64,000 bases of DNA, from the NCBI GenBank assembly GCA_037447605.1, contig CM074809.1, forward strand, positions 62,001 through 126,000, written 5' to 3'. The DNA is from Zygnema circumcarinatum SAG 698-1b. Taxonomy: Eukaryota > Plantae > Zygnematophyceae. The notes under the pieces are model-generated. The model ran no database searches. It saw nothing but the letters and a program-made list of their open reading frames with translations, and was not told the DNA's origin. Position numbers and translations under genes: made by a program. Below, piece by piece: positions 6,381-13,884 of the stretch; the first letter of the stretch is position 1; each line of letters begins with the position of its first letter.

Positions 6381-9300
6381 CTACCCGAAGCAGTTGGGCA
6401 CGCGCAGGCCCGTGTTGGAGTTGCAAGTGCCCACGCAGATAACACGGCCCACCTGCCAATCGCTCCCTGTCCCGACGCATATTCCGCTTTGGCTACCGAG
6501 GCACTGCACAAAGGAAGAGAAGGTAAAACTCAGGTAAAAAAAGTGGAGAAAAGTGCTTTCAGTGGTCAAAGCATTGCCAAGGGAGAGAGACAAGAGTGAG
6601 AAAGAGAAAGAAAAGGTGAATGAGAAGATGAGAGAGCGAGAGTGTGGGAGATGGTAAGAAATATTTAAGACAGGCAATAGGCTGACCGGATAAAAAAGGG
6701 GAAAAGAACACTAGTCTCACACTCGTCTTGGTGCAGTTCATGAGCTAGAAACTTGAAGGAAAAGGAAAGGGGCGTCGCATCACAGAGGGGGGATGAAGGG
6801 ACTCGTGCCTGCGTCCAGGTTTTCCCGCTGCGCGATCCGCAGAAGAGCGAGATGACGCTGCTGCACGTGTCGCCCCGCCTCCACTTGTAGTACACCGGGC
6901 AGGCCAGGGGCGGCTGCAAAATGAAACTCGTGCAAAACTGCAGCGCAACACAGCGTTCCGAAGATGTCAGGAGAGGAGAAACTCGCCATAAAATCCCTCG
7001 ATAATTACGAACAGGGTACGATAGAACACGGGACGCAGAGCATTCACACAACGGGAGGGGAGCAGTCAGCGGACCTGCATGGCGGGCACGAGGTTGTTGC
7101 AGTTGATCCCGCGGTTGAGCGCGAAGAACTGCCGCACCGTCATGAGACTCCTCTTCACGAGCGAATTGCACCGCTTCTTCTTCACGTCGCCCGCCACCAC
7201 TGCGTCCACCGACGAGCAAATTCTCGAGTCGTCCGGGACCCCTCTCTCCACGCACACCTGAACACAGGCCATGCAAAGGGAGGCAGGGCAAAGTTGAGCT
7301 CTTTGCAGAGTCTGTGGGATACTGCCTGCGCATGGAGCCTGAAGAGGGGGCGTTGCGTTACCTGTTGACCTGCAAGGTTGGGGTCTAAGCAGTCCAAGCC
7401 GGGATTTAAATCCTTGCTGAGAGAGCCCGGAGTTAGGTTCAGATCTACCTCGATGGAGGCACACGTGTCACCCTGCACATCTCAATTGCACAGTTGTTGG
7501 TGACGTGTTATATCGCAACAACATCGTTTTTAAAGGCGGTAGCTCTCATTAGTCATTGAATATCGAGCACTGCCTAGCAGAAAACAAGGCATCACCATGC
7601 TCGGCCTCTGATGTCTTCTTTATCAATAAACGCAGTTTAGTTTATCTACAGAATCCAAGAATACGAAAGATTCTTGTTTGAAACGTGTGCTCATCTCTAC
7701 TTGTTAACATATTCAACAAGTACGTGCAAGTAATAAGATCTATATTTGGATGACGTTTCACACAATGACGTTATTAAAAAGTAAAGCAACAAGGAAAGAG
7801 CATGCTTTCAGATGTATGGGCCCAGATCCACTTACAATCTGGACCGCGTACATGGATGTGCATTTGCTCGGAGTGGGTATGGTGATGACATCTCCGACCC
7901 GGAGGGTGGGGCACTGCACAGTGGCGGCCGCAATTCCGACTATCAGAGGGGAAGAGCCATTACAAACTGCGCCGCGTGCTTAGTGCTTTACTAGCGCTGA
8001 CTTCTCATCAAGAGCTCGGCAGTCCCTTACATTTATGGTTGGATTGGCGGCTTGCAATTGCTTTACAGTGAGTCCGTTTGCAAGCGCTAGTAATTTACAA
8101 GTGTCGCCCTTCAGTAGAGTGTAATTGAACGGTTGCGAGTTGCTGGTCTGCGCAGCTGCGTCGACCCAAAAGAGACGAATCCCATTTCAATTCCACATAG
8201 ATGGCATGCAGTTCTGCCTCTTACAAAGGGTTTGGAAGCTGACCATAACATCTGACCTACATCACTTTCCGTATGCAGAGCGTAGAGAGAAGTGCACATA
8301 CGTGTGACGCAAATCGGCTTCCCTTCCGACGTGCTGGCAAGGACGTAGCCGGCGACACACACGCAGCGGTAGGACCCCCCCCCGTCGTTCACGCACGTGC
8401 CGCCGCTGCACGGGTTGATGACGGCGGCCCCGCAGACATCGGCTGCACGCACGCACGCACCCACCCGCACGAGAATAACGTAAATTGTGAATCTGCTAAA
8501 TTACAAGAAATAGTTAAAGTAATCAAAGCAAGTAGCCAAAAAATATGGAATTCGAGAACAGTTCCCTTCTGCAGTAACGATGCATACATCCGCGCCCAGA
8601 GCTGTGACGACCCGCAGGAAAAGCACAAAGGAGCCCTTGCGGCAAGCAGGGGAGGGCTTCAAGGCGCGGCTCACTTGCAGCGCAGGTCTGAGTCCCGTCC
8701 GTGTTCCTAACCGCCGCGTAGCCGGAGGGGCATGCGCACGTGTAGGCGGCACCGGAAGGAGTGCAGACTCCCCCTCCACATGGGTTCAGAGGCAGGCATG
8801 GGTTCGGATTCGGCGCTGCATGCATCATACGAGTTACCGCAAAGAGTAAGCTCACACTTTCTAAGGCAAGTGATAAGTAGAAGTTTCAAGTTTCTTGCCG
8901 CTTTAATTCGCCAGCAGTTACGTGAACCAATGAAACTTTAATACACAACGTTGTGATCTCCTCTGGAGAAAGAAAGCAGCTGGGGGTTCTGATGCCTTCA
9001 GGCACACATGCGCCACTTTCTGAAAGGACAAAAAGCCTTGCTGGTTTTGCATCGGTTCAAAATTGCATGACGTCGCTTGAGAGGTGGATCGTCGAGTACT
9101 TACAAGCCATGACCGGGTATATGGAAGGCATGGTTCCGATTCCACAAATGTTTCGAAGTATGCGAGCGTATCCATTTACTCCCCACGACGATCCAAACGA
9201 GTTTCGAACAATCCAAAAGTCTACGGCGTTCTCTGACCCGTAACCGACAAGCGTCACAACATGCGAGAGCTGCGCTCCTGGGACGCAGCTTTTGCTTGCG

Positions 9301-12300: not shown

Positions 12301-13884
12301 CCAAAACGTCAGTCGGATGCAGCCATGGCCGGTAGGGTTGAGCACTCACCCGTCGCCTTTGCGCGAAGCTGCCGGCGAAGGAGCCTGCTCCCATGGCCGC
12401 CTCGTGTGCCTTGCCCGCCTGCCGCCCACGCCCATCCTATTCATTGCGTTATGGACTGGAACCATGGCTCTCCTGCCCGCCCTCATGGGTCGCCATGCCC
12501 ATGCCCATGCCCATGCCCATGCCCATGCCCATGCCCATGCCCATGCCCATGCCCATGCCCATGCCCATGCCCATGCCCATGCCCATGCCCATGCCCATGC
12601 CCATGCCCATGCCCATGACCATGCCCATGCCCATGCCCATGCCCATGCCCGGACGGCCATCGACGCAAAATGCATTGCACATTGTCGGCTTCGCAGCCTT
12701 GAGAGCCACGTGGCGGCCTTTGAGGCGGCGGGCACTGCGGGGAGGCGGTCCGCCGCGGGTAGCGTTTTATCGGGCAGAGCTGATACTGTGATATGGCGAT
12801 TAACTACTTTATCAACGTTAGTTGATTGCGTGCGCCACCTGGCAGGGCGCCACGCGCCCCGTACGGCATACGGCGTAGCCTCTTGGCGTGGCCGCGGCGC
12901 CGCGCGGCGTACGGACAGCGAGTGGCGCGGGGCGGCGGACCCGGCCAGGCGCTGCCGCCCCCTGCTGCCGTACGGCGGAACGCGCCTGTCCGTACGTCGG
13001 CGGCGCGCAGGGGAATGTGCCGCCCGCCCGCCCGGGGGGCGGCGGCACGCAAGCAAGGGAGCGGCCATGGCGGGGGGACCCGCGGCATGGCGGGGGGACC
13101 GGCTAAAGGGCGGCCATGCGAGAACGCGCCGCTCTCACAGGAGCGGGTGCGCAGTCGGGGGGACTGTGCGAGTTCACAGACTGGCAAGCAGCTGGGGCGG
13201 ATCCAGGATTTTACTTCAAAGGGGGCTGAGATCTAAGATTCTAAGATTCAGGGGGGGCTGACCAGTGAGTTGGACAAGAAAAAAATCTGAAATTCGTATT
13301 CGCCTTCAAAGGCGAGCAGTGCTGAAAACTGAGGGCTAGGCGCCACCAAACGCAACCGTGGATCCGCTACTTGCAGGCAGCGGCACTAATCGGCCTGATA
13401 GGACAACATCTCTGGTTCGACATGACATTGGAGAAGGGCTTGAGGGACCGCGAAATGCGACGGGCAGGAGCGGGCCAGAGCGCCATGGCGCGACCGTCAC
13501 ACGGTCAAAAGCTGGCTTCTAAAAACTTTGCAGGACAATTCTGCGCTAGTTCTGGAGGATTATGGGAGGGAGGGAGAGGATGACTGGGATAATGAAGGGG
13601 GGGGGTACGAGACGAGAGGACGACGACAGGGGGAGGAACGGGTCAAACGGCGAATCGAGGACCAAGACGAAAGGACATTGGGAGAGGAGACAGGGCTGAG
13701 GGGAGACATCTGGCCCGCCCTCCTCTTTTACTCGTGCTATTAGGCCTCGCCGCTCACCTCGGGTGGCCCTCGCTGAGTCACGCATCCACTCTTCCTCCGG
13801 CTCCACCCCACCAGCATCTCGCCATGCCGACGCCGTCGAGACGAAGACGCAAATGAGAATACATGCTGCTGCCCGCCGCGGCAT
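6381..13884 (-). CDS. Secreted ricin-B lectin - papain (C1A) - 2x EGF - 4x LysM modular protein, paralogue B
   Basis: Exons 11660-11788, 11218-11400 and 10639-10857 give KCLDIP..GVQLIQSDC..TQLW and KLCLES..VVLRAC..KQLW (QxW ricin repeats). Papain exons: 10315-10470 (DWR..NDQSSC), 9821-10047 (GSCSIFGVVASVEG), ~9492-9630, 9104-9317 (LSHVVTLVGYG..WIVRNSFG). EGF exons: 8675-8815, 8302-8442. LysM exons ~8030-8147 and ~7834-7915 give YTLLKGDTCKLLALANGLTVKQLQAANPTINCPTLRVGDVITIP; further LysM exons at ~7365-7475, ~7073-7258, 6809-~6935, 6381-6503. First exon 13758-13884 (MPRRAAACILICVFVSTASA|WRD, signal-peptide-like, phase-compatible) is assigned with lower confidence (~0.55). Confidence 0.88.
12494..12648. 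repeat. (GCCCAT)n hexanucleotide microsatellite, ~26 units
   Basis: Direct reading; one variant unit (gaccat). Lies in the putative first intron of paralogue B. Confidence 0.97.

What the first reader, a model, noticed from the sequence alone, without database searches (positions are those of the whole stretch)
6381..13884. Secreted ricin-B lectin - papain - 2x EGF - 4x LysM protease: candidate glycan-targeted antimicrobial or cell-wall system
Seen: hand splicing gives one ORF with a signal-peptide-like N-terminus, QxW ricin-B repeats, a C1A domain with Gln/Cys/His/Asn intact, two EGF modules and four Cys-flanked LysM modules. Established: LysM binds GlcNAc polymers (chitin, peptidoglycan) and R-type lectins typically bind Gal/GalNAc. 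Bacterial autolysins pair LysM arrays with papain-fold NlpC/P60 or CHAP domains, and some green algae have cysteine proteases fused to chitin-binding modules. Inference: this protein carries two different sugar-binding ends around a protease and could dock on fungal or bacterial walls, or on the alga's own matrix, and cleave locally. I do not recognise this full architecture as characterised.
Basis: partly seen in the sequence, partly recalled or inferred. Interest (0 to 1): 0.88.

Follow-up and report, generated by a model that had tools for sequence, protein, structure and literature searches.

The report
Ricin-headed, LysM-tailed secreted papain protease
This is a real, transcribed 18-exon gene of a green alga close to land plants that encodes a secreted papain-type protease with a ricin-type lectin head, two EGF spacers and four LysM sugar-binding modules; it is one more, compact member of a large unstudied gene family that this scan has already met elsewhere in the same genome.

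Summary
Observation confirmed. Spliced RNA contigs from four public runs in three studies give 18 exons on the minus strand. They join into one 834-aa ORF, with the ATG at 13884 and the stop ending at 6381. One contig links the lectin, protease, EGF and LysM parts.

- Scored directly on the window's exons, above Pfam's cut-offs: Peptidase_C1, EGF x2 and LysM1.
- Supported only through homologues and predicted folds: the ricin head and LysM2-4.
- Gln295, Cys301, His439 and Asn459 are intact. The I29 prodomain is absent. Two conserved tryptophans beside the active site are replaced (Ser302, Phe461), and only in the ricin-headed subclade.

Function is inferred, not shown. The likeliest reading is a secreted protease docked by LysM, and perhaps by the CBM13-like head, onto GlcNAc-containing or other glycans of microbial or algal walls.

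Relatives were found only in Zygnematophyceae (Mesotaenium, Closterium) and in unnamed transcript assemblies. All are unnamed. Peptidase_C1+LysM is already catalogued in Chlamydomonas (PMC2728734).

The scan has found this family many times before on other DNA of this genome. It is a new variant of a known kind and of moderate interest.

The parts
6381..13884 (-). Whole coding span: 18 exons, 17 introns (104-1339 nt), an 834-aa ORF plus stop.
   Evidence: Spliced RNA contigs; assembly and translation.
13758..13884 (-). Exon 1. ATG at 13884-13882. Signal-peptide-like residues 1-20, with the likely cut after Ala20 (ASA|W). The exon ends in phase 1.
   Evidence: Sequence. Loose ends of all four runs at 12420 read into this exon.
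12350..12418 (-). Exon 2, a Gly/Arg-rich linker (residues 43-65).
   Evidence: Loose end at 12420. The downstream junction is inferred from splice sites and the open frame.
12056..12103 (-). Exon 3, a Pro-rich linker (residues 66-81).
   Evidence: Joint 11788|12056 with a 48-nt side.
10639..11788 (-). Exons 4-6 (11660-11788, 11218-11364, 10639-10857): ricin/CBM13-type beta-trefoil, residues about 88-245. Three xLW motifs (GLW135, QLW181, QLW232) and two CL(D/E) motifs. All three exons are phase 1-1.
   Evidence: Weak Pfam scores on the pieces. Homologues P0002 and P0043 score above cut-off and map here. The profile hits CBM13 structure 1knl.
10315..10470 (-). Exon 7: linker with the family motif LNAFSRHAS, then the start of the mature protease (DWR, Gln295, Cys298). 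There is no I29 prodomain.
   Evidence: Alignments; no I29 hit.
9104..10047 (-). Exons 8-10 (9821-10047, 9493-9630, 9104-9317): papain (C1A) domain. Cys301 at 10042-10040, His439 at 9263-9261, Asn459 at 9203-9201. Unusual residues Ser302 (papain W26) and Phe461 (papain W177).
   Evidence: Pfam Peptidase_C1, 41.8 and 59.8 bits. Alignments. Codon positions. Fold of homologue P0043 matches plant PLCP structures, target TM-score about 0.86.
8675..8815 (-). Exon 11: EGF module 1 (residues 492-538), a phase 1-1 exon of 141 nt.
   Evidence: Pfam EGF, 22.6 bits; joints.
8302..8442 (-). Exon 12: EGF module 2 (residues 539-585), a phase 1-1 exon of 141 nt.
   Evidence: Pfam EGF, 29.9 bits; joints.
7836..8155 (-). 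Exons 13-14 (8031-8155, 7836-7913): LysM1 (residues about 597-640), the only canonical LysM.
   Evidence: Pfam LysM, 25.9 bits. Bacterial LysM HMM, 17.3 bits against at most 4.6 for shuffles.
7362..7472 (-). Exon 15: LysM2 (residues about 649-692), divergent and Cys-containing.
   Evidence: No direct Pfam hit. Aligned to Pfam-positive LysMs of Mesotaenium P0036 and P0037. Beta-alpha-alpha-beta unit in the models of P0043.
7075..7257 (-). Exon 16: LysM3 (residues about 706-752), divergent, with a Lys-rich insert.
   Evidence: As for LysM2.
6381..6937 (-). Exons 17-18 (6809-6937, 6381-6503): LysM4 (about 767-819) and a Cys-rich tail. Stop at 6383-6381. The intron between them (6504-6808) is GC..AG.
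   Evidence: Joint 6503|6809 in four runs.
6125..6380 (-). 3' UTR, at least this far.
   Evidence: X1 contig 1 (802 nt) continues 379 nt into the last exon; the end point is my arithmetic.
1..4528 (+). Tail-to-tail paralogue of the same ricin-headed subclade (papain, EGF x2, LysM x4). It shares CGSCSIF, RNSFG and NxFSRHAS, and it runs off the window start.
   Evidence: tblastn of the model, 35-67% identity per exon.

Best explanation
The gene encodes a soluble secreted papain-family (C1A) cysteine protease built as signal peptide, linker, ricin/CBM13-type beta-trefoil, protease without the usual I29 prodomain, two EGF spacers, and four Cys-stabilised LysM modules.

Shown: it is transcribed and spliced as one mRNA, the ORF is intact, and the catalytic Gln/Cys/His/Asn and the six cysteines at the positions of papain's three disulfides are present.

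Inferred: the LysM array, and possibly the lectin head, tether the enzyme to GlcNAc-containing or other glycans outside the cell. Candidates are chitin of chytrid or fungal parasites, bacterial peptidoglycan, or glycoproteins of the alga's own wall or mucilage. The protease would then cleave proteins locally. Of these I favour a defence or surface-surveillance role.

The gene is the compact, LRR-less, ricin-headed branch of a family in Zygnematophyceae that shares the papain, EGF, LysM x4 chassis and swaps N-terminal binding heads.
For: Single spliced transcript with all modules, seen in four runs from three studies, and one open frame.

Pfam scores above cut-off on the window's own exons for Peptidase_C1, EGF x2 and LysM1. 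Catalytic residues are intact and the six cysteines at the positions of papain's three disulfides are present.

Ricin head: homologues are Pfam-positive and map onto the model. Their profile hits CBM13 structures that bind sugars.

Four LysM-type folds are predicted in the 53%-identical homologue P0043. They match chitin- and peptidoglycan-binding LysM proteins: Ecp6, NlpC/P60, CEBiP, CERK1 and the Volvox chitinase LysM.

The papain fold of the homologue matches plant PLCPs at a target TM-score of about 0.86.

Secretion: the N-terminus looks like a signal peptide and there is no second hydrophobic segment.

Family context: homologues carry other binding heads (LRR, legume lectin) on the same chassis. 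Earlier scan notes report hevein, PAN and FTP heads in this genome (not tested here).

Precedents: LysM-tethered NlpC/P60 peptidases (PMC4356369) and Peptidase_C1+LysM in Chlamydomonas (PMC2728734).
Against: No binding or activity data exist for any family member.

LysM2-4 and the ricin head fail direct HMM scoring on this protein, so sugar binding by them is uncertain. Ricin sugar-site residues were not assessed.

The tryptophans at papain positions 26 and 177 are replaced (Ser302, Phe461). The I29 prodomain, which normally folds and inhibits C1A enzymes, is missing. The enzyme could therefore be weak, differently regulated or inactive.

Several relatives have Ser, Gly or Thr instead of the catalytic Cys, so catalysis is dispensable for at least part of the family.

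The structure models are of a homologue, not of this protein. They have pLDDT about 70, and the lectin head is poorly predicted.

The runs are Logan contigs that are not on record as RNA. That they are RNA is inferred from the missing introns.
Confidence: 0.6

Rival explanations
1. A protease for the alga's own extracellular matrix. The glycan-binding modules would hold it in the alga's wall or mucilage, where it processes wall glycoproteins during growth, cell division or conjugation. Microbes would not be the target.
For: The spliced form stands in seven contig sets from three studies with no known elicitation. The only algal C1A protease with a reported physiological role, Volvox VcPap-11, is induced by the sex pheromone (PMC2474614). 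EGF modules are typical of matrix proteins.
Against: LysM's established ligands are GlcNAc polymers, which to my knowledge are not known wall components of zygnematophytes. Large expansion with swapped recognition heads is more typical of genes facing variable outside targets. Contig depth cannot rank expression.
Confidence: 0.25
2. A glycan-binding sensor, scaffold or decoy whose papain domain no longer acts mainly as a protease. It would serve as a binding or inhibitor-trapping surface, as in the Ser/Gly variants of the family.
For: Family members from Mesotaenium and Closterium carry Ser, Gly or Thr at the nucleophile position. This subclade has lost W26 and W177 and the prodomain.
Against: Gln, Cys, His and Asn, and the cysteines at the positions of papain's three disulfides, are kept in this gene. 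The window paralogue keeps the CGSCSIF and RNSFG motifs. P0043 and P0003 keep all four catalytic residues, P0001 has Ser at the Asn position, and P0002 is truncated before His. That is conservation of the catalytic set across a clade with 100/99 support.
Confidence: 0.12
3. Not one gene: an artefact of hand splicing or of chimeric contigs, with separate lectin, protease and LysM genes, or a pseudogene.
For: The tool warns that a contig across two genes does not prove one transcript. k-mer contigs can in principle merge paralogues. One junction (exon 2/3) was inferred, not listed.
Against: All introns are canonical. There were 0 mismatches. The same joints appear in four runs from three studies. 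One uninterrupted 834-aa frame runs from a signal peptide to a stop. Homologous transcripts and proteins of other samples and species have the same order of modules.
Confidence: 0.03

Closest known systems
Zygnematophyceae papain, EGF, LysM x4 family (unnamed proteins of Mesotaenium endlicherianum such as ME000065S09001, and of Closterium spp. such as CAI5502628.1 and CLOM_g10158; other members in this genome reported by the scan)
   Same: Same chassis and module order, with conserved cysteines through the four LysM modules. The model is 29-36% identical to them. All are secreted-type multi-module proteins and none is characterised.
   Different: This gene and its subclade have a ricin/CBM13 head instead of LRRs or a legume lectin. 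They are much shorter (834 aa), keep the catalytic Cys, and carry the derived CGSCSIF and RNSFG motifs.
Chlorophyte Peptidase_C1+LysM proteins (architecture listed for Chlamydomonas in PMC2728734) and the Volvox pheromone-induced C1A protease VcPap-11 (PMC2474614, citing Amon et al. 1998). From my own memory of Amon et al. 1998, the Volvox protease carries chitin-binding repeats and is also induced by wounding; that paper could not be opened.
   Same: A papain-family protease fused to LysM-type chitin-binding modules in a green alga. It is extracellular and outside the cathepsin B, F, H and L groups.
   Different: No ricin head or EGF pair is reported there. Orthology was not tested, and no chlorophyte protein came up in my searches. 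The fusions may be independent.
Bacterial LysM-tethered papain-fold cell-wall hydrolases (for example Thermus thermophilus NlpC/P60 D,L-endopeptidase, PDB 4uz2/4xcm, PMC4356369)
   Same: The logic is the same: tandem LysM modules dock a Cys/His hydrolase on a GlcNAc polymer. The LysM array of the homologue matches these structures.
   Different: The catalytic family differs (NlpC/P60, not C1A), as does the substrate (peptidoglycan stem peptides). There are no lectin or EGF modules, and the LysMs are N-terminal.
Land-plant secreted PLCPs (bromelain, ficin, actinidin, papain; immune PLCPs such as RCR3 and RD21)
   Same: These are the closest solved catalytic domains: E about 1e-29 and 32-36% identity to the homologue. 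They share the same catalytic residues and, by position, the same three disulfides.
   Different: They have an I29 prodomain, conserved W26 and W177, and at most a granulin tail. None has LysM, EGF or ricin modules.
Multi-LysM chitin binders (Cladosporium Ecp6, rice CEBiP, Arabidopsis CERK1 ectodomain)
   Same: Tandem disulfide-containing LysMs. Ecp6 is the best Foldseek match of the array (E 1.5e-6). Pfam's plant-receptor LysM models give weak hits in homologues.
   Different: They have three LysMs rather than four, and no enzyme domain. The TM-scores of the whole array are low (0.2-0.36), so the packing is not comparable.

Membership tests
Peptidase family C1A (papain-like) | Sequence match to Peptidase_C1 above the curated cut-off | tested here: met
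   41.8 and 59.8 bits on two exons (cut-off 20.7).
Peptidase family C1A (papain-like) | Catalytic Cys25 and His159 with Gln19 and Asn175 | tested here: met
   Gln295, Cys301, His439 and Asn459 align with them.
Peptidase family C1A (papain-like) | N-terminal I29 (ERFNIN/GNFD) inhibitory prodomain | tested here: not met
   No Inhibitor_I29 hit on any exon piece or in homologues P0043, P0003 and P0002. The lectin head and a 40-residue linker stand in its place.
Peptidase family C1A (papain-like) | Conserved Trp26 and Trp177 flanking the active site | tested here: not met
   Ser302 and Phe461. These are shared by the ricin-headed subclade only.
Peptidase family C1A (papain-like) | Proteolytic activity sensitive to E-64 | not testable with these tools
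   Needs recombinant protein.
R-type lectin / CBM13 beta-trefoil | HMM match above cut-off on this protein | tested here: not met
   15.1 bits (cut-off 29) and 12.9 bits (cut-off 25.6), on single exons only. The spliced domain could not be submitted whole.
R-type lectin / CBM13 beta-trefoil | Homology to proteins that do meet the cut-off, and three (Q/G)xW repeats | tested here: met
   P0002 scores 43.1 bits and P0043 29 bits, both mapped to residues 137-261. GLW, QLW and QLW are present. The profile hits CBM13 structure 1knl at E 1.2e-4.
R-type lectin / CBM13 beta-trefoil | Beta-trefoil fold and intact sugar sites | tested here: inconclusive
   The head of the P0043 model has pLDDT 24-65. Sugar-site residues were not assessed.
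LysM (CBM50) | HMM match above cut-off | tested here: met
   Met for LysM1 only: 25.9 bits (cut-off 20.9), and 17.3 bits with an independent bacterial HMM.
LysM (CBM50) | Modules 2-4 are LysM | tested here: inconclusive
   There is no direct HMM score. Support comes from alignment to four Pfam-positive LysMs in P0037, four beta-alpha-alpha-beta units in models of a 53%-identical homologue, and Foldseek hits to LysM proteins.
LysM (CBM50) | Binding of GlcNAc polymers | not testable with these tools
   Needs binding assays.
EGF-like domain | Six-Cys EGF pattern with an HMM match above cut-off, twice | tested here: met
   22.6 and 29.9 bits (cut-off 21.5). Each module is one 141-nt phase 1-1 exon.
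Zygnematophyceae papain, EGF, LysM x4 family | Collinear alignment over protease, EGF and four LysM modules with conserved cysteines | tested here: met
   BLASTP to P0037 (36% identity over model residues 246-780), P0036, P0044 and P0004; alignment.

The most novel reading that the evidence does not exclude
The ricin-headed subclade could be a prodomain-independent C1A protease. In this reading the lectin head plus the conserved LNxFSRHAS linker replace the I29 prodomain as folding aid or latch, so that glycan binding by the head or the LysM tail releases or positions the active site. That would be a glycan-gated extracellular protease. [quoted passage not shown]
Probability: 0.1. Interest if true: 0.8.

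Novelty: new variant of a known kind. Interest (0 to 1): 0.45.

Why it matters
Secreted papain-like proteases and LysM receptors are two pillars of land-plant immunity. Here both kinds of module sit on one secreted chain, in the algal lineage closest to land plants. The family is expanded and exchanges its recognition heads. If the proteins dock on microbial glycans and cut there, they would show how extracellular defence was organised before or beside receptor kinases.

The prodomain-less, Trp-substituted active site of this subclade would also interest protease biochemists.

As it stands, this locus adds a fully transcript-supported, compact reference member of the family. It adds no new principle. 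The fusion of C1A with LysM is already catalogued in green algae, and the scan has reported the family repeatedly.

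Tried and rejected
Whole spliced protein. It has no reference and I did not type it. No tool other than my own scripts therefore saw the 834-aa protein whole. Pfam, structure prediction and the database searches were run on single exons or on homologues (P0043, 53% identical, as proxy).

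The search of protein representatives with exon 8 (75 aa) gave only 35 hits and no identical protein. This genome's proteome is evidently not among the library's representatives.

Bacterial origin of the prodomain-less protease. Several near hits are bacterial C1 peptidases with CBM, dockerin or F5/8 modules. But the model is closer to plant PLCPs (36.8% identity, 115 bits to P0040) than to those (26-31%, about 63-76 bits). I dropped this idea.

LNAFSRHAS as a relic of the GNFD prodomain motif. Its position, 21 residues before DWR and aligned to the very end of canonical propeptides, does not fit. I left it as an unexplained family motif.

The papain-domain tree supports the ricin-headed clade at 100/99. 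With only two outgroups it cannot show whether that clade is sister to the LRR-headed members. P0062 fell with the outgroups.

Literature. No paper in the held library describes this family. Searches found nothing relevant, and a search for run ids SRR8128906 and SRR8128908 found nothing. Amon et al. 1998 (PMC144025) is not held.

The organism was not identified beyond its relatives.

Full report
WHAT IS THERE

The region 6381-13884 holds one protein-coding gene on the minus strand. Raw six-frame reading already shows exon-sized open pieces with papain, EGF and LysM character. Pfam scores them above its curated cut-offs:
- Peptidase_C1: 41.8 and 59.8 bits.
- EGF: 22.6 and 29.9 bits.
- LysM: 25.9 bits.

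TRANSCRIPT EVIDENCE

The look-up of sequencing runs found seven contig sets of "organism A", from three studies, that hold 41-57% of the words of the stretch. That is about the exonic share. I laid four of them on window:6450-12440. The stretch was kept under 6,000 letters and clear of the hexanucleotide repeat at 12493-12650.

The result was 15 listed joints, all with minus-strand GT..AG ends except the last intron, which is GC..AG. They were identical in all four runs, with no mismatches. Low-depth contigs across single introns look like a minor unspliced fraction.

In all four runs the loose ends at 12420 read into the 3' end of the exon that carries the ATG at 13884. One joint was not listed. 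I placed the exon 2/3 junction (12350|12103) from four things: the 48-nt side length of the neighbouring joint, the contig 12075-12379, the GT and AG sites and the reading frame.

The 18 exons give a 2505-nt CDS with one stop at its end. X4 contig 16 (2284 nt) runs from exon 17 into exon 1, so the lectin, protease, EGF and LysM parts are on one assembled transcript.

A caveat: these are k-mer contigs of runs that are not on record as RNA. That they are RNA is inferred from the missing introns.

THE PROTEIN (834 aa)

- Residues 1-20 look like a signal peptide (MPRR, a hydrophobic core, ASA|W). No other hydrophobic segment reaches transmembrane strength. The C-terminus is not hydrophobic, so I expect a soluble secreted protein. 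No signal-peptide predictor was available.
- Residues 21-87 are a low-complexity linker.
- Residues about 88-245 (exons 4-6) are a ricin/CBM13-type beta-trefoil. On this protein's single exons the HMM scores are below cut-off. Homologues P0002 and P0043 do pass (43.1 and 29 bits) and map onto residues 137-261. The GLW/QLW/QLW and CLD motifs are conserved. A profile of the homologous heads finds CBM13 of Streptomyces xylanase and of an alpha-galactosidase in the PDB, with E values of 1.2e-4 and 3.6e-4.
- Residues 246-285 are a linker with the family motif LNxFSRHAS. There is no I29 prodomain.
- Residues about 283-490 are the papain domain. Gln295, Cys301, His439 and Asn459 are present, as are the six cysteines at the positions of papain's three disulfides. 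The closest solved relatives of the homologue are plant PLCPs: bromelain, ficin and actinidin.
- Two conserved tryptophans are replaced: papain W26 by Ser302 and W177 by Phe461. Only the ricin-headed members share this. They are this gene, the window paralogue, P0043, P0001 (Tyr at position 177), P0003 and P0002 (truncated before position 177). The four with a full protease domain form a clade with 100/99 support.
- Two EGF modules follow, each on a 141-nt phase 1-1 exon.
- Four LysM-type modules follow. LysM1 is canonical (17.3 bits with an independent bacterial HMM against at most 4.6 for shuffles). LysM2-4 do not score directly. However, all four align with the four Pfam-positive LysMs of Mesotaenium P0037. 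AlphaFold models of the 53%-identical P0043 show four beta-alpha-alpha-beta units. Foldseek matches the array to Ecp6, NlpC/P60 LysM pairs, CEBiP, CERK1 and single LysMs of fern, Equisetum and Volvox chitinases.

All introns from exon 1 to exon 7, and those around both EGF exons, are phase 1. Those in the LysM part are phase 0. This fits assembly by exon shuffling, as another note of the scan proposed.

RELATIVES AND CONTEXT

A second ricin-headed copy lies tail-to-tail at window 1-4528 on the plus strand. It is 35-67% identical per exon and has the same special motifs.

In public data the nearest proteins are transcript-derived:
- P0043: 53% identity over model residues 103-834.
- P0001: 54%.
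- P0003: 43%.
- P0002: 39%.

Then come unnamed proteins of Mesotaenium endlicherianum and several Closterium species. They share the protease, EGF, LysM x4 chassis but carry LRRs, a legume lectin or EF-hands in front. Many of them have Ser, Gly or Thr at the nucleophile position. I found no member outside Zygnematophyceae. The next matches to the tail are fungal LysM proteins.

Earlier notes and follow-ups of this scan describe many further members in this same genome, with hevein, PAN, FTP or LRR heads. I did not re-test those loci.

Neighbouring genes look unrelated: a protein kinase piece, a MOR2/PAG1 cell-morphogenesis gene and a ribulose-phosphate epimerase.

HOW IT MOST LIKELY WORKS

Shown: one expressed mRNA, an intact ORF, secretory features, a complete catalytic set and glycan-binding-type modules on both sides.

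Inferred from what these domain families do elsewhere: the LysM array binds GlcNAc polymers (chitin, peptidoglycan) and the CBM13-like head binds another sugar. The protease is thereby concentrated on a surface, where it cuts proteins.

I put about 0.6 on "glycan-tethered active extracellular protease". Within that I lean to a role against chitin- or peptidoglycan-bearing microbes, because the family is expanded and swaps recognition heads.

The rivals are:
- a role in the alga's own matrix (0.25);
- a mainly non-catalytic sensor or decoy (0.12);
- an artefact (0.03).

The missing prodomain and the Trp replacements are unexplained. They are also the most interesting biochemical feature.

WHAT IS KNOWN

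Peptidase_C1+LysM is listed as a green-algal architecture lost in angiosperms (PMC2728734). VcPap-11 of Volvox, a C1A protease outside the cathepsin B, F, H and L groups, is induced by the sex pheromone (PMC2474614). From memory, Amon et al. 1998 described that protease as carrying chitin-binding repeats and as wound-induced; the paper could not be opened. Bacterial NlpC/P60 enzymes use LysM pairs in the same way (PMC4356369). No held paper describes the zygnematophyte family.

VERDICT

This is a new variant (ricin head, no prodomain, altered active-site surroundings) within an uncharacterised family, and that family is itself a variant of a known kind of fusion. The scan has already met the family repeatedly on other DNA of this genome. 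Interest 0.45.

Noticed in passing
window 12493-12650: A perfect hexanucleotide array (CCATGC) x26 inside the 1339-nt first intron. It reads as His-Ala, Met-Pro or Gly-Met repeats in ORF lists but is not coding.
   Followed up: partly
window 13962-14115: A GGGAG-type purine-rich repeat (about 25 copies on the plus strand, CTCCC on the gene's strand) just upstream of the ATG, in the 5' UTR or promoter. It produces a spurious extensin-like SPPLP ORF. X2's contig reaches about 125 nt upstream of the ATG (my arithmetic from the 255-nt loose end).
   Followed up: partly
window 1-4528 (+): A tail-to-tail paralogue of the same ricin-headed subclade, with the same exon pattern and the same CGSCSIF, RNSFG and NxFSRHAS motifs. 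It is 35-67% identical per exon, so the duplication is not recent.
   Followed up: partly
proteins P0036, P0037, P0044, P0049, P0053, P0055 (Ser); P0039 (Gly); P0057 (Thr): Many Mesotaenium and Closterium members of the family have the catalytic Cys replaced, while His and Asn are mostly kept. They are either serine-nucleophile variants or pseudo-proteases.
   Followed up: partly
window 6504-6808: The last intron uses a GC donor (GC..AG). Low-depth contigs (6478-6838) retain it in three of the four runs.
   Followed up: no
window 17867-18652 (-), 22808-29900 (-), 40350-41039 (+): Neighbouring exon pieces score as a protein kinase C-lobe, a MOR2/PAG1 (Furry-like) cell-morphogenesis protein spread over at least 7 kb, and a ribulose-phosphate 3-epimerase. 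None has an evident link to the protease gene.
   Followed up: no
proteins P0008, P0009, P0010, P0012, P0014, P0020, P0029: Among the nearest non-family hits to exon 8 are prodomain-less C1 peptidases fused to CBM96, dockerin/cohesin, F5/8 type C, PKD or Por-secretion modules, which are modules typical of bacteria. This looks like an independent case of sugar-tethered papain-fold enzymes.
   Followed up: partly
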